Assembly: GCF_011386835.1 (NCBI RefSeq)
Contig: NC_088799.1
Location: forward strand, 24,180,001 to 24,244,000
Direction: 5' to 3'
Source: Chrysemys picta bellii
Taxonomy: Eukaryota
Length of the DNA stretch: 64,000 nt
Made by a program: the position numbers and the translations under genes. This document shows, one piece after another, positions 34,841-62,086 of the stretch. Position 1 is the stretch's first letter, and every line of letters starts with the position of its first letter. The notes beneath the pieces were generated by a model that saw only the letters and a program-made list of their open reading frames with translations, did not search any database and was not told where the DNA came from.

Positions 34841-36013
34841 TGGATGGACTCCTGTACAAGAGTCATTTACTTCAATGGCAGCAGAGTTAGGCCAACATTG
34901 AGTGCTTTTGAAAATGCTACCCCTATTAACGATATACCTGACAATACATAAAAAAGAAGTAATTACTTGCCCTACTTGTACCCCATTGCTGACTGATGCA
35001 GTCACAAATCTCATATAGTTCAGTAGTATCGTATATCTGATTAACACATGTTGTCTTTTGGGAGGACAGCAGTGTCCTACTGCAGCAATAGTTTTGAGCA
35101 GACACTTCTGTTAACCCATCAGACACACAGATTATTCGAATTTCTGGTACTATCCACGAGCAAGTCTACAATCAGAATCAAGTCTCAGACTAGTCTGTTT
35201 CCTTCTGTGCCACCTATTTGGTCTTCCTGTGTAAATGGAAAAAGTTGGCTAATTTAATTTGTATTTTTAAATTAAGAGTTCAGATGAATTAAAAATAAAT
35301 ACACGCGTATGATTATTTTTTTTTTTTGTATACAATATAAGCCTGATTTTCTTTTCATTTATACTGATGGACACCAAGAGCAATTCCAATGAAGTAAATG
35401 GAATTACCCCATCATAAAACCACAGTGAGTGAGAACCCTGTGGTATCTAGAGTTGTAGGAGCTCAGCCCTTGTGCTAGTATGTGACCACATCAAAAGTGT
35501 GTTTCCCCTTATGCATCATAAATTCCACATTACCATTGGTGCTCAAAATCTCGTATCAAGAATGTGACCCAGCTATGCATTTATTTTTAGCGAATAAGGT
35601 CTTGAATACTTAGTGAAACCACTGTATTACCCAAAATATACAGTGCACACAGATACAATATACATTTTCTGATCACTCTTTTCTGGCTTGCTCATAAGAA
35701 GTATCTGTGTGTGTAGTCTGATTCATTTGTGGGAATGTGGAATTAATGATTCAGACAGTCTCTACCCTGAAAATATTTAGCTGTTGATCTTTTTTTTTTT
35801 TACAGACAAATCTTGCTATTTTAGGGTTGCGGTCTGAGGACTGTGGGCCTTGAAGCACACTGGCCTATATATCTGCAAGATGATCCAATGTTTTCAATTT
35901 ATTAGTACAATGAAACGTACTGATTTTTGGAAATACGTAATTAATTTCTGTTGTAATTTAGATATCAATTCTGCCATGGGAGTTGGTCACCTGAAGAATG
36001 GCTCCAAATTCTG

Positions 36014-36686
36014 AAAAGTTTGCCCACCCCAGTACAGTGCAAAACTCAATCATCTCAACCATGTATTCTAATATAGGTCTAACAACATGGTATTTCATCA
36101 ATATGAGAGGGACCTTTAAATAAAATTCATGTCTACTCACCAAAAGAGAATTTATAAGGACTTTACTACACACAAAAATTGCACTAATTTATCTACATCA
36201 GTTTAGAAATTGGGTGGGCACTTTCTAAACCAATTTAAGAGTGTCCACACAAGGGGATTACACCCATTTCACTAAATCAGTGCAATCCCTTTGAGTGGAC
36301 ACTGTCAAATGCGTTTAAGAATGCCTTATATCCATTTAGCTGTATTCGTAAACTAAACCAATATAGGGCACACAAACCGATTTAGTTAAATCTGCACAAC
36401 TTTTGTGTTTAGACAAGGGCTAATTCTATGCTACATGTGACCTCTTTCTAATAGAAGGGTCCTATCACATGGTAAAAATGATTGTGTGGATGGCAGCCCC
36501 ATGTTTCCTTTCATGTAGGCTGGTGCCTATTTAAACTAAACTGAGTTGGAACATTCTTGGTTTTATAGTTCACTTTAATTTATGTCAAATAACACTAACT
36601 TAGAAACACTTCCAAGAATTTAAAGAACTAACCTGAGTAGGTGAGTTACTGTCTCACATATAAGTAACAGTCATTCACTAATCATA
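36014..36686. repeat. ~670-bp segment duplicated in inverted orientation at 55989-56011 plus 57318-57974
   Basis: Direct comparison shows about seven differences over ~670 bp. Confidence 0.95.
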
Positions 36687-53638: not shown

Positions 53639-54565
53639 TAAGGCTGCAAGTCTGTCACGGAGGTCATGGATTCCGTGACTTTCCATGACCTCCGTGACTT
53701 CTGCAGCGACCAGCAGCAGCAGTTTGGGTATGTGCGAGGGGGCTCAGGGTTAGGAGGTTTGGGGGGTGGGTGCTTACCTTGGGGTGGGGGGCTCCCCGGC
53801 TTCCACTGGCATGGCCCTGCAGCTCCAAGGCAGCGGAGGGGCCAGGGGGCTCAGCGCGCTGCCCACACCCGCAGGCACCACCCCCACAGCTCCCATTGGC
53901 TGCGGTTACCGGTCAATGGAAGCTGCACAGCCAGTGCAGCACGCGGAGCCCTCTGGCCTCTCTGCCACCTAGGAACTGCAGCCAGGATAGGCGAAACTGG
54001 GTAGGGAGCCCCACCCCACCCCCAGCACCAGCGGGGGTCCCAGGCCACCCGCCACTGCCTCCCCACAGCACCAGTGGGGGTCCCAGGCCGCCCGCCGCTG
54101 TCCACCCTGCCCAGCACCAGTGGGGGTCCCGGGCCGCCTGCCACTGCCCGCCCCGCTTAGCACCAGCGAGGGTCCTGGGCCGCCTGCCAGTGCCCGCCCC
54201 GCCTAGCACCAGCAGGGGTCCCAGGCCGCCTGCCGCTACCCCCCTGTCGTCCCAGCACCAGCGGGGGTCCCGGGCCACCCACCACTGCCCATCCTCTCCC
54301 CTCCCAGCAGCACCAGCGGGGGGTTCCAGGCTGCCCGCCGCTGCCCAGTCCCCGCAGCGCCAGTGGGGTCCCAGGCCACCTCCCCCAGCACCCGCGGCGC
54401 TCCTGGACCACCCCCGCCTCCAGAGCATAACCTCCCCCCCCCAAGTTTTAGTTAGGGGTATATAGTAAAAGTCATAGACAGGTCACAGGCCATGAATTTT
54501 TGTTTACTGCCCGTTCCCTGTCCATGATTTTTACTAAAAATACCCATGACTAAAACGTAGCCTTA
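53639..54565. mobile_element. MITE (taaggct...agcctta) with internal GC-rich minisatellite
   Basis: Terminal taaggct / agcctta; ~9 copies of agcaccagYgggggtcccRggcc at 42-50-bp spacing over ~54020-54370; TSD weak (cccgtaac / attataac). Confidence 0.65.
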
Positions 54566-55336
54566 ATTATAACCACTTTACTACAATACGTTTTCTCTCT
54601 CATCCAGCTTTCAACAAATGGCATAAGCCAACAAAGTTATGAAACTATAATAAAGGAAAACTAACTTCCTTACCACATGCTCTAGAAGCCTCTTCAGACT
54701 GGAGACAAAACTCTTTTAGACTTTGCATGTAACTATGTTTCAAAACATATTTAAACATGGTTCAGAGGTGGTTACAACAATCCCTACTTACAATATGGCT
54801 TATTCAGCCAGTTTGGATTTGAAAAGCAAATGGTCTAGTTGACCAGAAGGAAGAAGATAGTGTTCCAAAGTGATGTTCTCCCTCCTGTGTGTACCCAGTC
54901 CTAGGACAGGAACTTGGATTCCTATCCTACATGTTACACTGTTTAAAAAAAAAAAAAATTTACCCACACTACTAAAACAGAGAAATGTGTGTGTACGGAA
55001 AAGCACTGCCAAGGCACTACTATATCAAAACATCCCCACCCTGAAATCTCCCCGCAAGTAAAGCTCTGGTCAATTCTCTGAGTAATAACATGTCTTGGAC
55101 AGAAAGTTCCTTTGACTAGAACATTTGCACACTGCTTAGTCACATAAATAAACAGTATTATTAGTAAATATGTAGTTGTTCTAGTGTTTGTTTTAAGAAG
55201 AACCCATAAGCAAATCTCATTATTCCAGTCTTTCTTACTTGGGTAATGCTTTATATTTAATAGAAATTTTTGAGTGCCATCTAGGGGCAAACAGCATTTG
55301 CCAAAGGACTTTTGAGGACTGTTATACAGTATAAAG

Positions 55337-58272
55337 CAGAGGTGGGCAAACTACATCCCGTGGGACCGTCCTGTCTGGCCCTTGAGCCCCCAGCCAGGGA
55401 GGCTAGCTCCCAGCCCCTCCCCCACAGCCTCAGCTCACCGTGCCGCCAGCGCTCTGGGCAGCGGGGCTGTGAGCTCCTGCCCAGCAGTGTGGCTGCAAGA
55501 GCCGCCAGGTGTCGTGTATTAAATTGCTCCTTGTAGGAATGTGCTACTTAGGGAGCACCAGGACTGGCAGCCGTACGTAGTACACTATAAGTAGCACATT
55601 CCTACAGGGAGCAATTTAATACACTACACCCAGGTAGGGAAGGCTGTGCCTCCCCAAATCGCCTGGCCCCCACCCCCTATCTGCCCCCTCCCACTTCCCG
55701 CCCCCTGACTGCCCCCTCCGAACCCCCCGACCCATCCAACCCCCCTGCTCCTTGTCCCCTGACTGCCCCCTCCTGGGACCCCCCGCCCCAACCGCCCCCT
55801 GGGATCCCACCCCATATCCAACACCCCCTGTTCCTTGTCCCCTGGGACCCCTGCCCCTTATCCAACTCCCCCGCTCCCCACCCCCTTACCATGCCGCTCA
55901 GAGCACCAGGACTGGCATCTGAAAGTAGTACATCGTAAGTAGCACATTCCTACAGGGAGCAATTTACTACACTACAGGTTTAATACATTATGATTAGTGA
56001 ATGACTGTTACCAGAGGTGAAAGTAAGCCGGTACGGAGGACCAGGACCGGTAAGAAAAGGTGCAGTCTGACTCCTCCTCCAGCCAGGCTGACAACGCTAG
56101 GCTCCGTGCTTTCCCCCTGCCTGGCACTCAGCAGCGGGTGCAAGGGCTCCCCTCTAGCTTGCAGCAGGGAGACTGGCTGAGAGGGAGAAGCAAGCCACTG
56201 TTCAACCCCCAGGGTTAGGAGCCGTTTCTGGCATCCTTGTTAATTTCACTCACAGTTGCTGGGGGGAGGGGGCCGGGGAATGGTGTGTTTGACTATGGCA
56301 GGGGCAGTTCTTTTCTGCCCCCGGGATGAGGGCACAACAAATACAAGCATTTGGCTGCATAGCTTAAATCCTCCCCACCCCCAACTCAGCAGGGGCTCTC
56401 CCCTCTAGCTGCCTGCATAAGAACATAGGGTGCAATCTCAGATCTCTTTTTGTTTTGTCCTGCCTGCAGAGTGCAGTGGCTGAAATTGACAAAACTTTCT
56501 CTAAGTATTTTGTATATTTCATGCAGGCTATTCCAGTTGTCCTTCATTCACCCCTGCCCTGCCTTCCCCTACTACTAGCCACGCACTGGTGTGCCCCCTG
56601 CACTCTTTTATGTGCCTGGAAGGGAGATTAAAAAATCCTTGATATCTGACTTGCTAGGAAATAGGGAGGATCTAGGGAAAGCAGGGCACTGGTGGGCATG
56701 GTGCAACGTAGTCCCTTGCCCTCCCTGGCTCCCACCATGTGGGGGTATGGCACTCAAAAGCTAACTTTGGAACATCCGTATGAATGTCTTCCTGGGAAAA
56801 CAAAATCTTATTGTCTTGCTTCACAGATCTAAATCTACTCTGATCCAGGTATGTTCTAAATGTATAGGTACAGTATGGATGGATCTCTCAAAAAAGATAG
56901 CTCTTCAGTGTAGGAGTTGGACCAACAGTCCCCTGGGGAAGGACTGATTCCATTAAGCAGCACACATTAAGCAGAAGTTCCTGAGGTGTTAGCCCAGAAA
57001 CATTGTCTCCCCCACACACCCCTTAAAAGGGCACTGGCACCTCCCCCACCCCCGTCCCGATTTTTCACATTTGCTGTGTGGTCACCCTACCCAGGGTTCC
57101 CAGCCACCTCTGCAGCTGGTAGCTCTGGGGGTGATTTAAAGGACCCGGGGCGCCTAGCTTCAGCTGGATCCCCAAGCCCTTTTAAATCCTGATTTAAAAA
57201 TCCTGGGATTTAAAGGCCCCACCTCTTCCAGTAGAGGCTACGCCTCTTCCGGCTGAGGCCCTGCCCCCTCCGCAGGACTCTGGAGTACTGGTAAGTCCTT
57301 TAAGTTACTTTCACCCGATTGTTACTTATATGTGAGACAGTAACTCACCTACTCAGGTTAGTTCTTAAAATTCTTGGAAGTGTTTCTAAGTTAGTGTTAT
57401 TTGACATAAATTAAAGTGAACTATAAAACCAAGAATGTTCCAACTCAGTTTAGTTTAAATAGGCACCAGCCTACATGAAAGGAAACATGGGGCTGCCATC
57501 CACACAACCATTTTTACCATGTGATAGGACCCTTCTATTAGAAAGAGGTCACATGTAGCATAGAATTAGCCCTTGTCTAAACACAAAAGTTGTGCAGATT
57601 TAACTAAATCGGTTTGTGTGCCCTATATTGGTTTAGTTTACGAATACAGCTAAATGGATATAAGGCATTCTTAAACCCATTTGACAGTGTCCACTCAAAG
57701 GGATTGCACTGATTTAGTGAAATGGGTGTAATCCCCTTGTGTGGACACTCTTAAATTGGTTTAGAGAGTGCCCACCCAATTTCTAAACTGATGTAGATAA
57801 ATTAGTGCAATTTTTGTGTGTAGTAAAGTCCTTATAAATTCTCTTTTGGTGAGTAGACATGAATTTTATTTAAAGGTCCCCCTCATATTGATGAAATACC
57901 ATGTTGTTAGACTATATTACAATACATGGTTGAGATGATTGAGTTTTGCACTGTACTGGGGTGGGCAAACTTTTTGGCTCAAGGGCCACATCTGGGTGGG
58001 GAAATTGCATGTAGGGCCATGAATGTAGGGCTGGGGCAGAGGGTTGGGGTGCGGGAGGGAGTGCGGTGTGCAAGAAGGGGCTCAGGGCAGGGGATTGGGG
58101 TGCAGGGAGGCGTGCAGTATGTGGGAGGGGGCTATGGGCAGGGGGTTGGGGTGCAGGAGGGGCGTGGGATGCAGCAGAGGGTTGAGGTGCAGGAGGGGTG
58201 CAGCAGGGGGGATCAGAGCAGGGTGTTGGGGTGCAGGAGGGGTGCGGGGTGCGGCAGGGGGTTGGGGTGCAG
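55337..58272. mobile_element. Composite, rearranged hAT-MITE locus with captured DNA
   Basis: Left TIR cagaggtgggcaaac at 55337 preceded by gtataaag (55329-55336); the same 8-mer recurs at 58273-58280, exactly where the GC-rich MITE-like sequence stops. Confidence 0.6.
56012..57317. mobile_element. Non-autonomous hAT element nested in the duplicated segment
   Basis: TIRs cagaggtgaaagtaa / ttactttcacccg; TSD actgttac / attgttac; the empty site is visible in the paralogous copy near 36664-36671. Confidence 0.9.
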
Positions 58273-60820
58273 GTATAAAGCATTTCCAGGACACATTTAG
58301 TGTAACCTAAAGATGCAGCGATGAACTGGGACACTATGGGCCATATTTTTAAAGGTATTTAGGTGCCTTAAGATAGGCAACTAATGGGATTTTCAAAAAT
58401 GTCTAGGTGCCATGGCAGTTAGGCACCTAGGTGTTTTTGAAAATCCCAGTAAGGTGCTGCTGTGCATCCTTAGGTGCCTAAATACCTTAAAAAACTTGGA
58501 GCTATGGAACTTCTTTTTTGAAGAATTTATGCTTTTTGTTATTTAATTAATATTTTAACCCTTTTGGGGTGTGAAGAAATCCTTCCAACTACAAGCTAGT
58601 GTAGTTGTATTGTCTGGAGATAGGCAAAAAATGGCTTTAAGACAGGGGTGAATGGACTATATGGGGAATCCCATTACTAATTACTAGATTTTACAATTTA
58701 GTGAAAATGCAAAACAGCGCTAAAAACCTCACCAATGGTGCTTAAAATAAAAACCTCACCAGTAGTGCTTAAAATAAAATAGTGTTGTAATAGGAGGGAG
58801 GTACAGCATGAACCAATTTTTGCAGACTAAGGGTACTAGGTGTGAGAAGAAGTAACAGCACCACCCAAAGGTTATAAATGCCTTAGTTCTATTTCAAGCC
58901 ATGACTGAGAACTGGGGGAAGAACTCATTTGCCGATGTGTTGTTTCCCCATTGGCCCATAGGTAGCATGACATCACTGACATTAGCCCTGCTATCACAAT
59001 AGCAGTCTTGTTGGTCTACATTTTGGTAAATTTCAAATAATTAAATCAACTTTCAGTATGAGTTTGCAGTTTAACAAAAGGAGGTCCAGAAAGAGTCAAC
59101 CATGCTTAGATTTTTTCATGGATGTCTCTCTCAAATTAATTTTGAAACTTTCAGGTACCACTTCCCTACAGCACCTATTTTTTCTCACATCAAAGATACC
59201 GACAAATTGGAAAATTAAGCAGAGAACTGCAAGAGGGATTGATTTATGAGAAAAGATTAAAAACTAACAATTTCTATTTTGGCTAAACAATAATAAAGAA
59301 ATTGTAAATTATCCTCATGTATGTGTAAATGTATAGGTAAATACTAAGGAGGGAGAAAACTGCTTTGTCCTAGAGGACATGGAGTAATGGAACAAAATTA
59401 CACCAAAGAAAATATCCTAATAGCAAGAGCCATTAGATTATGGAATATTCTCCCAAGACTACTGGTGAAAATTCCAAAAGTTGAAAGAAGCGTGAGAGAA
59501 ATGGCTGCAAAGGAGCTATGCCAACTACATTTTAAAAGGGTGGTTAGGAGTTAGGACAAACAGTAAATGTTGTTTACTAGTGCTCTCTTTTCTCTCTTTT
59601 CTCTAGTTTCTCACACACAAGCTTTGTTCCTGGTTTCTTAGTTTTTCAATGTACTTAGCCTAATTTAGAATTCATAATTCAAAATGTCCTAGTGGGGCAT
59701 GTCCTTTGACATTATCACAGAAGGCGATTACACACATTACCTTAAACAAAAAACTTGGTCCCCAATCCTGCAAGCTGACAGATCTCTGTGCTCTCAGTTA
59801 CAGTAATCAGAGCAGGTGGCAACAGCAGTGTTGGAAGGTGATGAGATCTTGAGGAAACAGTATCATAAGGTGTAATACAGTCCGTACGTTCTTATGTGAC
59901 TTTACCATGTTGTGCGTAGAGTGGCGACCTCTTGATATTGCATGCTCATGTTGGTGCAGGCGCAGCCCTTTCAGTGCGAGGTCAGTGTGCTGTGGTGCAG
60001 GGCTGACACGTAGGTGTGAAACCACTACAAGGCCAGCAATGACCCAGCAGGGTGAGGTCACCGTGGGCCGTTGCTGTGGCACTTCAGAGCACGACCAGCG
60101 GGAGGCGCCACTGACTGCACTGGTACCGTGGGACAGACTGACTGCGGCAGCTCCACTTGGCCAAACCCAGCTGCCATCTCTTGCGCAGGGGCACCTGTGA
60201 CACTTTATGCAAAGGGCTGCAGGAGCGAATTCACTAGCTACAGGGAATTGCCGGTGGTGACAGAGACCGGCCGTGGCGGAGCTGAGCACTGACCCCGGCA
60301 CATCCGAGACCTGCCTCGCGCCACCGCTTAGCTGCCCGTGAAAGGAGCGAACCATAACGGCTTCCCCTGACTGGGTGGCCCGGGGCTATGGCGGGCTCGG
60401 CGGGGGGAGGGCTGGCCATGACCACGGGGCTCCCTCCCAGCTGCGACCCAGGGCACTTTCCCCCGGGCCGGATACCGGCGGAGGATGCTCCGCCCTCCGA
60501 CCGGCTTGTTCAGCATCTCGGCGCGCTTACGCCGCTCCACCTCTCTGGAGGCAGGTGGAAAGTGACCCCTCCCCCGCACCCATCGCCTTCCACGTCGGCC
60601 GGGCCTGGTGACCCGGAAGTGATCCCCGCTCTGTTGCGAGTCCGAAATATTTTCTCCGGCGTTTCTTTAATACGACGCTTCTCGGCGGGATCCGCTCGTT
60701 TAAACAGCGGAAACTAGCCGCTTTCCGGGGCGTTTCGCGGCCGCGAGGAGCGGAGGGGCTGCAAATTGACCCCGGAAGGACTCGGGGCAGAGGCGCCCCC
60801 GCCCTTCGGCTGTGTGCTGA

Positions 60821-61225
<405 letters not shown>

Positions 61226-61927
61226 CTCGGCTCCCGCCGCTTCCTTTCCGGCCTGGCTGTCCCGGGTGAGGGGTCGCGGCTCGAGGCAGCCTCCGTGGTG
61301 GCGACGTGGCACGTTGGGGGGGGGGGGGTCTGAGCCGTGAGCGTATCGCGGCTACGTCCTGAGCCGGGGCCCTCAGGCAGCGCTGACTCCCTGAGCCCAT
61401 CTTCCGTTGCTGGCAGCCGGCTGCCCTGGAGAAGGGAGACGTGGGGCCGTTAGTAGCCATGCGAAGCAGGGGGGTCTCGATTCACACCGCCCGCTCTGAA
61501 ATTGCAGCGCCCTCGGAAGCATTTGCTCCAGCAAGCTGAAGGGAAGCATCGCCTCCAAATCCTGCCGCGATTACTTTGGCCTTCAGCTTCCCCGCGCCTA
61601 ACTCCGTGGCAGTGGGGTTGGAACAGTTTATGTAGTGGGGGTGCTGAAAGCCATTGAACAAAACTGTAAATCTGTATATGATGGAAACCGCTCCAAGCCA
61701 GGGGGTGCTTCTGCACCCCTAGTTCTAGCACCCTTGCTGTGAGAGTGTCACAGATGAGCCCCATAAAACATAGATCTTCTCTGCCTCAGCGAAGTGACTT
61801 TTTAAAAAATGGACAGCCCTGTCCTCTTAGCTCTGTCCTGTTTCTATCCAACACATCTGACTAATTCTAGATCAAGTGTAGTGAAGACAAAAATGTTAGT
61901 AACCTGTCTCACTTAATGGGGGACTGA

Positions 61928-62086
<159 letters not shown>

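What the first reader, a model, noticed from the sequence alone, without database searches (positions are those of the whole stretch)
55329..58280. Composite hAT locus: intact left end, captured host DNA, lost right end, one apparent 8-bp TSD
gtataaag precedes the TIR at 55337 and recurs at 58273-58280, exactly where the GC-rich MITE sequence ends, although no right TIR is present. Between them lie a MITE left half, duplicated and inverted filler, the inverted copy of 36014-36686 (later hit by another hAT), and the interior of a second MITE entered through a TIR-like 17-mer shared with the 36-kb copy. Abortive gap repair with template switching is established for Ac/Ds and P elements. Inference: this is such a capture event in a vertebrate, a route to Pack-type elements carrying host DNA.
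Basis: partly seen in the sequence, partly recalled or inferred. Interest (0 to 1): 0.75.

Follow-up and report, generated by a model that had tools for sequence, protein, structure and literature searches.

The report
One-ended hAT transposon patched with nearby DNA
A small cut-and-paste transposon upstream of the turtle SSR3 gene lost its right end, which was replaced by about 1 kb copied backwards from 20 kb away; this is a clear but ordinary, immobile example of a repair-patch process already catalogued in animal and plant transposons.

Summary
The 8-mer gtataaag sits just before a hAT-type terminal repeat (TIR) at 55337. It recurs at 58273, exactly where high-copy G-rich transposon (MITE) sequence gives way to unique DNA. 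No right-hand repeat exists.

Between the two 8-mers lie:
- MITE-family sequence (55337-55978)
- a 10-nt junction
- an inverted 99% copy of 36033-36686, split by a later 1.3-kb hAT insertion
- a true MITE left terminus plus 298 nt of G-rich array

- The "filler" hairpin is itself a high-copy repeat (about 430 times unique depth), and one of its odd junctions recurs elsewhere in the genome.
- The shared "17-mer" is 19 nt and is a genuine transposon terminus.
- A second gcactgta 386 bp beyond it suggests the 36-kb locus once held a whole MITE. The patch may therefore be one contiguous copy rather than several template switches.

Single-copy contigs from four related organisms (about 0.5% diverged) carry the left junction. 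One fully bridges the right junction and two nearly do. No empty site was available. The copied segment stands at about twice unique depth, so it has not amplified.

Best reading: break repair after cleavage at the right end. This is a new member of a known kind (Pack-TIR / Ds filler / fractured Ac). The scan has noted similar hAT patches elsewhere in this genome.

The parts
55329..55336 (+). Left copy of the 8-bp target-site duplication gtataaag
   Evidence: Single-copy contigs of four organisms run from unique flank across 55336|55337 into the TIR (records 1, 9, 17, 26).
55337..55506 (+). A-type left end of a hAT MITE. The TIR is CAGAGGTGGGCAAACT, followed by subterminal sequence.
   Evidence: Depth is about 1,500 times unique. 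The same end type is the right end of a complete TSD-flanked MITE in L024:371-729.
55507..55629 (.). 123-nt fold-back with arms of about 44 nt. It is itself a high-copy repeat.
   Evidence: Self-complementary at 81% over 122 nt. DNA fold gives -43.7 kcal/mol. Depth is about 15,800 at 55576 in 30 contigs. A paralogous contig joins 55395 to 55534 and spans the arm|loop junction.
55630..55900 (+). C-rich MITE interior. In other genomic copies it follows the B-type terminus after about 37 nt. Here it lacks that terminus.
   Evidence: joint 57990 to 55641 with 37 letters between; consensus loose end before 55633; depth up to 7e5.
55901..55978 (+). Second copy of the loop-plus-arm unit, 89.5% identical to 55553-55628
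   Evidence: 8 of 76 positions differ, against 6 of 655 in the captured segment.
55979..55988 (+). 10-nt junction of unknown origin. Its 9-mer tttaataca also occurs 365 bp upstream at 55614-55622.
   Evidence: The chance of such a nearby 9-mer is about 0.03 (own estimate from base composition).
55989..57955 (-). Inverted copy of 36033-36686 (654 bp of low-copy DNA), interrupted by the nested element. It ends with gcactgta next to the B-type TIR.
   Evidence: 6 substitutions and 1 indel. Depth is about 2x unique in organisms A, C, D.
56012..57316 (+). Later insertion of a 1.3-kb hAT-like non-autonomous element. It contains a fragment of an ultra-abundant repeat at about 57043-57089.
   Evidence: Perfect 11-nt TIRs at 56016-56026 and 57305-57315. 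Duplication gactgtta/gattgtta, absent from the 36-kb copy. Contigs of A, D and E all break at 57320, so the insertion is probably shared.
57956..58272 (+). True left terminus (CTGGGGTGGGCAAACT...) of a very high-copy B-type MITE plus a truncated G-rich array. Its first 19 nt are shared with the 36-kb locus. No right TIR.
   Evidence: 130-149 paralogous contigs per run diverge without consensus just before 57958, as expected at a transposon end. Paralogs run on with more G-rich units past 58261.
58273..58280 (+). Right copy of gtataaag, abutting non-terminal MITE sequence
   Evidence: The junction is bridged by a single-copy contig in organism D (48 nt on the MITE side) and nearly bridged in A (27 nt) and C (29 nt) (records 22, 6, 14).
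36014..36686 (-). Probable donor locus: 654 bp of low-copy DNA plus a 19-nt MITE terminus remnant (36014-36032)
   Evidence: In organism E the contig of this locus stops matching exactly at the position equivalent to 57974 and runs on 316 nt unlike (record 29).
35639..35646 (-). Second gcactgta, 386 bp beyond the one that abuts the 19-nt terminus (36033-36040). Possibly the other half of a target-site duplication of a MITE since lost from the donor locus.
   Evidence: The chance of an 8-mer recurring within 400 bp is about 0.025. Suggestive only.

Best explanation
A hAT MITE with an A-type left end inserted at gtataaag, about 2.6 kb upstream of the SSR3 start codon. Later its right part, including the right TIR, was lost. 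The cut fell exactly at the element/flank boundary, which is where hAT transposase cuts.

The gap was closed by repair synthesis on an ectopic template about 20 kb upstream, read in inverted orientation. That template supplied 654 bp of low-copy DNA, its adjoining gcactgta, and the first 317 nt of a B-type MITE that I infer then sat at the 36-kb locus. The patch was joined to the remaining MITE through a 10-nt junction and to the right flank with at most 1 nt of overlap.

Afterwards a 1.3-kb hAT element inserted into the patch, and the donor's MITE was reduced to 19 nt. The product has one TIR, cannot move, and has not amplified.

Shown: the anatomy, the copy relations, the high-copy nature of every MITE block, and presence of the outer junctions in four related organisms.

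Inferred: the break, its cause, the direction of copying, and the former MITE at 36 kb.
For: - The 8/10-mer pair sits exactly at TIR|flank on the left and repeat|unique on the right (boundary confirmed by depth and contigs).
- No right TIR, even a degenerate one.
- The captured block fills almost exactly the space between the two MITE blocks. This is expected for a patch but not for an arbitrary duplication out of this locus.
- The donor is 99% identical, on the same chromosome, about 20 kb away. This is the cis bias reported for animal Pack-TIRs (PMC8277862).
- 57956 is a genuine transposon terminus (loose ends).
- A second gcactgta lies at 35639-35646.
- The junction 9-mer is repeated 365 bp upstream.
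- The assembly is not at fault: independent contigs of A, C, D and E carry the left junction. The right junction is fully bridged in D and nearly bridged in A and C. D's contig crosses 57974 with 57-kb-type variants.
Against: - No empty or intermediate allele was seen. All four organisms laid, and by word share probably all seven found (0.45-0.70), already carry it.
- Direction of copying rests on parsimony from the 8-mer pair, not on an outgroup.
- The second gcactgta has about a 2.5% chance expectation, and the 367 nt it encloses show no MITE features.
- The right flank shows no hAT excision footprint.
- Without a family consensus I cannot say whether 55337-55978 is colinear with its subfamily or is itself rearranged (junctions at 55629|55630 and 55978|55979).
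- Inner junctions other than 57974|57975 were not among the contig pieces listed.
Confidence: 0.5

Rival explanations
1. After excision, one-ended gap repair wandered over several templates: MITE left half, inverted and duplicated filler, the 36-kb segment. It then entered a different MITE through a TIR-like 17-19-mer that happened to lie in the 36-kb DNA.
For: It rests on the same outer anatomy as the best explanation. A 19-nt identity would make an efficient switch point. Microhomology of 1-36 bp is reported at Pack-TIR breakpoints (PMC8277862). There are several unusual junctions in 55507-55988.
Against: The 'filler' is high-copy family sequence, and its arm|loop junction recurs in a paralogous contig. 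Its two copies differ by 10.5% against 0.9% for the captured segment. A 19-mer that begins exactly at the transposon's first base is a transposon remnant, not chance host sequence (loose ends).
Confidence: 0.2
2. A two-ended composite (a true Pack-hAT or macrotransposon bounded by the A-type end and the right TIR of the B-type MITE) transposed as a unit into gtataaag. It lost its right terminal part afterwards.
For: The 8-bp duplication flanks the whole block. Both ends share the same terminal 16-mer, so one transposase could use them. L024 shows A-type and B-type ends paired in one element.
Against: It still needs a later deletion ending exactly at the element/flank boundary. The donor retains the 654 bp, which a cut-and-paste move would have taken. 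The captured segment has only two copies. No other copy of the composite is seen in the window.
Confidence: 0.1
3. Unrelated events with a chance 8-mer. The 654 bp is native here. Two MITEs inserted on either side of it and each lost its far end. The 36-kb copy is a later duplication taken from this locus, including 19 nt of MITE.
For: A duplication with arbitrary ends explains the 19-mer without any switch. After 55978 comes gtttaata, a 5/8 match to gtataaag. An 8-mer recurs somewhere within 3 kb 9% of the time.
Against: It requires a perfect 8-mer (really a 10-mer) exactly at the repeat/unique boundary, with odds of about 1e-4 to 1e-3. It needs two independent one-sided truncations. The duplicated segment would have to match the inter-MITE interval to within 10 and 19 nt.
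Confidence: 0.1
4. Transposase-independent replication error (fork stalling and template switching, or microhomology-mediated break-induced replication) at a G-rich, hairpin-bearing MITE.
For: The G-rich arrays and a -43.7 kcal/mol fold-back are plausible fork barriers. Tan et al. favour transposition-independent gap filling for most single-copy animal Pack-TIRs (PMC8277862).
Against: It does not predict loss of the right TIR ending exactly at an intact duplication copy. In Tan et al. both TIRs are retained and breakpoints lie toward the interior of the element.
Confidence: 0.08

Closest known systems
Single-copy Pack-TIRs of animals (Tan et al. 2021, Nat Commun 12:4280; PMC8277862)
   Same: A hAT element carries a copy of nearby non-transposon DNA. 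The parent is on the same chromosome within tens of kb. Junction homology is short. The element is single-copy. The origin proposed is gap filling with template switching.
   Different: Pack-TIRs keep both TIRs, and their breakpoints lie toward the interior of the element. Here the right TIR is gone and the right breakpoint is the element boundary itself. Their table lists 0 Pack-TIRs for painted turtle.
Ds and Ds-like elements with filler DNA; abortive gap repair after Ac excision (Rubin and Levy 1997 and Yan et al. 1999 from my own knowledge; Du et al. 2011, PMC3260210)
   Same: A hAT family in which interrupted repair after excision yields elements with foreign filler, sometimes traceable to a donor locus.
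   Different: Ds elements keep both 11-bp TIRs. This is a turtle MITE family with no autonomous partner identified here.
Fractured Ac (fAc) of maize: a hAT element that has lost one terminus (Ralston, English and Dooner 1989, from my own knowledge, not read here)
   Same: One terminus is retained at its original junction, the other is lost, and the element is immobile on its own.
   Different: fAc is a plain terminal truncation. Here the missing part is replaced by about 1 kb copied from 20 kb away, and the flank's duplication copy is intact.
P-element-induced gap repair with ectopic templates (Gloor, Nassif, Engels and colleagues, from my own knowledge; cited as reference 21 in PMC8277862)
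   Same: An excision break is repaired by copying from a nearby ectopic template, with efficiency falling with distance.
   Different: That is an experimental system in Drosophila with a different superfamily. Here there is only a fixed, old end product.

Membership tests
hAT-superfamily non-autonomous element (MITE) | 8-bp target-site duplication | tested here: met
   gtataaag appears on both sides of the block. The nested element has gactgtta/gattgtta.
hAT-superfamily non-autonomous element (MITE) | Terminal inverted repeats at both ends (5' CAG...) | tested here: not met
   The left TIR is present at 55337. There is no reverse-complement TIR within 4 of 16 mismatches in 55000-58700. The composite is therefore a remnant, not an element. 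The nested 56012-57316 element does have paired TIRs.
hAT-superfamily non-autonomous element (MITE) | High copy number, with other copies ending at the same terminus | tested here: met
   Depth is 1e3-1e4 times unique over the MITE blocks. 130-149 contigs per run diverge just before 57958.
Pack-TIR (Tan et al. 2021) | Non-transposon insert with an identifiable parental copy | tested here: met
   36033-36686, 99% identical, inverted, about 20 kb away.
Pack-TIR (Tan et al. 2021) | Insert flanked by both TIRs of one element | tested here: not met
   Only one outward-facing TIR is present. The second TIR at 57956 points the same way as the first.
Pack-TIR (Tan et al. 2021) | Mobility or amplification of the chimera (multicopy class) | tested here: not met
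   The captured segment stands at about 2x unique depth in A, C and D, which is the two known copies.
Abortive gap-repair or fractured-end product | One original junction intact, other terminus missing, duplication copy on the flank retained, foreign DNA between | tested here: met
Abortive gap-repair or fractured-end product | A precursor allele (a simple element with both TIRs) at the same site | tested here: inconclusive
   All four organisms laid already carry the left junction; the right junction is bridged in one and nearly bridged in two.

The most novel reading that the evidence does not exclude
Both loci may be one-ended remnants of the same kind. Each would have an 8-bp duplication, a left TIR, foreign DNA and no right TIR: gtataaag...gtataaag at 57 kb and gcactgta...gcactgta at 36 kb. 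One would have served as repair template for the other before being damaged itself. With the other hAT-patch notes from this genome, that would point to a recurrent, one-sided repair outcome peculiar to this G-rich MITE family in turtles. Such a pattern could be counted genome-wide.
Probability: 0.15. Interest if true: 0.5.

Novelty: new member of a known kind. Interest (0 to 1): 0.3.

Why it matters
It is a tidy vertebrate example of what happens when a cut-and-paste transposon is cut and the break is patched from nearby DNA. The donor, the junctions and the later history can all still be read.

It adds little in principle. Hundreds of animal hAT and Tc/mariner elements with captured DNA are catalogued, and the maize Ac/Ds literature covers filler DNA and lost ends. 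Its modest value is twofold:
- It shows a one-ended, dead-end outcome that Pack-TIR screens miss by design, because they require both TIRs.
- The painted turtle scored zero in the published census, so turtles may be under-counted.

It lies 2.6 kb upstream of SSR3. Nothing here suggests an effect on that gene.

Tried and rejected
1. Orthologous empty site. One run search and one read-laying run showed the insertion in all four organisms laid. No 55336-to-58281 skip was among the joints listed. Word shares of 0.45-0.70 in all 20 holders suggest none is empty.

2. Orthologues from more distant turtles, anchored on SSR3.

3. Family consensus.
- BLAST of each block against the window found no further copies.
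- A metagenome scan for the B-type terminus gave 25 loci. Only L024 and L011 extend the match, to 31-37 nt, and they are MITEs of other eukaryotes.
- L024 was useful only to show that A-type and B-type ends pair in one element.
- The canonical order of the blocks in 55337-55978 therefore stays unresolved. My recollection of a consensus was not used as evidence.

4. Alternative-transposition models (reversed-ends, sister-chromatid, composite insertions by re-replication) were rejected because they put a TIR next to each duplication copy.

5. Assembly artefact was rejected on the cross-organism contigs.

6. The search of earlier findings by sequence and by mechanism words returned nothing.
Full report
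**What is there**

The window is turtle DNA, according to the scan's notes. It has no N runs. The finding lies 2.6-5.6 kb upstream of exon 1 of SSR3 (TRAP-gamma). That exon was recognised by Pfam PF07074 at about 60896-61030 on the + strand and by 96-100% identical SSR3 proteins of reptiles and birds.

The 8-mer gtataaag occurs at 55329-55336 and 58273-58280. There is one more copy in the whole window, counting both strands. The identity actually extends to 10 nt.

The first copy abuts a hAT-type terminal repeat, CAGAGGTGGGCAAACT, at 55337. That 12-mer core occurs only three times in the window: at 55341 (+), 57960 (+) and 36017 (-). The second copy of the 8-mer abuts a G-rich tandem array. 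A search allowing 4 mismatches in 16 finds no reverse-complement TIR anywhere in 55000-58700.

**Is the 8-mer pair chance?**

- The per-site probability from base composition is 2.5e-5 for the 8-mer and 1.6e-6 for the 10-mer.
- An arbitrary 8-mer of this window recurs somewhere within 3 kb 9.4% of the time.
- Here it falls on the exact boundary between very high-copy repeat and unique DNA. The laid contigs fix that boundary independently:
  - Depth drops from 1e5 to about 40.
  - Paralogs continue with further G-rich units past 58261.
  - Single-copy contigs start in the last 27-48 nt of the array and run into the flank.
- Allowing about ten candidate boundaries, the odds are 1e-4 to 1e-3. I take the pair as a real target-site duplication.

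**Anatomy between the two copies**

1. **55337-55506** is the A-type end of a MITE family present at roughly 1,500 times unique depth.
2. **55507-55629** is a 123-nt fold-back with DNA fold energy -43.7 kcal/mol.
3. **55630-55900** is C-rich MITE interior.
4. **55901-55978** repeats the loop-plus-arm part of the fold-back at 89.5% identity.
5. **55979-55988** is a 10-nt junction. Its 9-mer tttaataca also stands at 55614-55622.
6. **55989-56011 plus 57317-57974** is the inverted copy of 36014-36686. Apart from the nested element's duplication, it differs by six substitutions and one indel.
7. **About 56012-57316** is a nested non-autonomous hAT-like element. It has perfect 11-nt TIRs and the duplication gactgtta/gattgtta. 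It is absent from the 36-kb copy.
8. **57956-58272** is a B-type MITE left terminus plus 298 nt of G-rich array.

**What the reads add**

The run search found 20 runs of seven coded organisms holding 0.45-0.70 of the sampled words. An empty allele could hold little more than the flanks, which are about 41% of the stretch scaled by recovery. So probably none of them is empty.

I laid contigs of four organisms (A, C, D, E) at 90% likeness or better.

- **Left junction.** It is crossed by single-copy contigs in all four (records 1, 9, 17, 26).
- **Right junction.** It is crossed in D with 48 nt on the MITE side, and nearly crossed in A (27 nt) and C (29 nt).
- **Age.** Flank differences between organisms are about 0.5%, less than the 0.9-1.2% between the two copies of the captured segment. 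The capture therefore predates their split, and the assembly is not at fault.
- **Copy number of the captured segment.** Depth over it is about twice unique in A, C and D.
- **Both copies in each genome.** The contigs are mosaics of 36-kb-type and 57-kb-type variants, so both copies exist in these genomes.
  - D's contig crosses 57974 by 13 nt and carries 57-kb-type variants.
  - E's record 29 is the 36-kb locus. It stops matching exactly at 57974 and continues for 316 unlike letters.
- **Nested element.** Contigs of A, D and E all break at 57320, right after the one-base difference in the nested element's duplication. This suggests the nested element is shared too.

- **The "filler" is not locus-specific filler.** Position 55576 in the hairpin loop has depth about 15,800 in 30 distinct contigs.
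- **One of its junctions recurs elsewhere.** A paralogous contig joins sequence like 55395 and earlier to sequence like 55534 onward for at least 34 nt. It therefore spans the same arm|loop junction. At least that junction is a subfamily feature.
- **The two loop-arm copies are not copies of each other from the capture event.** They differ at 8 of 76 positions, against 6 of 655 in the captured segment (Fisher p = 1.7e-5). They are either much older or were copied from different family members.
- **The C-rich block and the terminus at 57956 belong together in ordinary copies.** Paralogs join position 57990 to 55641 through 37 other letters, and a consensus loose end precedes 55633. Here the two are separated and out of order.
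- **57956 is a real transposon end.** In every run, 130-149 contigs diverge there without consensus.
- **A-type and B-type ends pair in one element type.** A complete MITE with an 8-bp duplication in a metagenome contig of another eukaryote (L024:371-729) has a B-type left end and an A-type right end.

**Which copy is the parent?**

No outgroup was available, so this rests on parsimony.

If the 654 bp were native at 57 kb, three things would be needed:
- The 10-mer pair would be chance.
- Two MITE blocks would each have lost their far end.
- A duplication out of this locus would happen to match the inter-MITE interval to within 10 and 19 nt.

If the 36-kb copy is the parent, the duplication pair, the missing TIR and the extent of the copy all follow from one patching event. 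I therefore take 36 kb as the donor.

**The 19-mer**

The shared stretch is 19 nt and begins at the first base of the terminus. It is therefore a transposon remnant at 36 kb.

The 8-mer gcactgta abuts the terminus in both copies (57948-57955 and 36033-36040). It occurs again at 35639-35646 on the same strand, 386 bp beyond the remnant. The chance expectation for that is about 0.025.

This suggests a whole MITE once sat at 36 kb between two gcactgta copies. If so, the host segment, the duplication and 317 nt of MITE were copied as one contiguous stretch, and the donor lost its MITE later. This sub-claim is inference and only weakly supported.

**Mechanism**

The right breakpoint coincides with the element/flank boundary, which is the site of hAT transposase cleavage (established knowledge of hAT excision). 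The left junction is untouched.

The simplest account has four steps:
1. Cleavage or excision at the right end.
2. Loss of the right part of the element.
3. Repair synthesis on the 36-kb template in inverted orientation.
4. Sealing by end joining, with 0-1 nt of overlap at 58272|58273 and a 10-nt insertion at the inner junction that partly repeats nearby sequence.

I cannot exclude:
- the multi-switch version (0.2)
- a two-ended composite that transposed and then lost an end (0.1)
- unrelated events with a chance 8-mer (0.1)
- a transposase-independent replication error (0.08)

**Comparison with what is known**

Tan et al. (PMC8277862) catalogued 370 Pack-TIRs in 100 animal genomes.
- 208 of them are hAT.
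- 57% lie within 15 kb of their parent.
- Junction microhomology is 1-36 bp.
- Most are attributed to gap filling with template switching.
- Their table lists none for the painted turtle.

Du et al. (PMC3260210) describe maize Ds-like elements carrying filler DNA that is sometimes traceable to donor genes.

The present locus works like these but fails the Pack-TIR definition. It has one TIR, a breakpoint at the element boundary, and only two copies of the captured DNA. It is closer to a fractured element with a patch. It is a dead end rather than a route to a mobile Pack-type element.

The scan has already noted similar hAT patches on other pieces of this genome: s1-320921 (judged ordinary on follow-up), s1-329969, s1-318421 and s1-328323.

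**Limits**

- Read laying and the look-up of sequencing runs allow one call each, and both were used.
- No family consensus could be built. The internal order of 55337-55978 relative to its subfamily is unresolved.

**Verdict**

This is a new member of a known kind, of modest interest.

Noticed in passing
window 60896-61030 (+), CpG-rich 60000-62000: Exon 1 of SSR3 (translocon-associated protein gamma): Pfam TRAP-gamma E = 1.6e-11, and 96-100% identity to reptile and bird SSR3. The composite lies 2.6 kb upstream of the start codon.
   Followed up: partly
window 35639-36040 (-): gcactgta, then a 19-nt MITE terminus, then 367 nt of unrelated low-copy DNA, then gcactgta again, with no right TIR. 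This is possibly a second one-ended hAT remnant in the same window. The chance of the 8-mer recurring this close is about 0.025.
   Followed up: partly
window 57043-57089, inside the nested element: A fragment of an ultra-abundant repeat (depth about 6.7e5 in organism A's run). Paralogs show a consensus upstream of 57043 and diverge without consensus after 57089, which marks a family terminus. The nested 1.3-kb element is therefore itself composite.
   Followed up: no
window 36217-36325 and 57664-57772: The captured 'host' segment contains a roughly 110-bp imperfect palindrome (about 75% self-complementary). Depth there rises to 3-4x unique, so part of it is probably an ancient MITE-like relic rather than plain unique DNA.
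   Followed up: no
L024:371-729 (metagenome contig ABEF01051842.1); L007:913-1609 and L014:664-1346: These are complete MITEs of other eukaryotes with the same terminal GGGTGGGCAAACT core. L024 has a B-type left end, an A-type right end and an 8-bp duplication. This TIR type is evidently widespread beyond turtles.
   Followed up: partly
window 53640-54572 and 58340-58500: Two further high-copy repeats flank the unique DNA around the locus. The first is a GC-rich element whose paralogs diverge at 54565-54572. The second is a small palindromic MITE built on taggcacctaa motifs, with paralogs showing 64- and 101-nt internal skips.
   Followed up: no
window 57641 and 57724: Both window copies of the captured segment agree at these sites (C and G). 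Contigs of organisms C and D read T at both sites, and E reads T at 57724 in part of its contigs. This could reflect gene conversion between the two copies in the window's lineage, or contig mosaicism.
   Followed up: no
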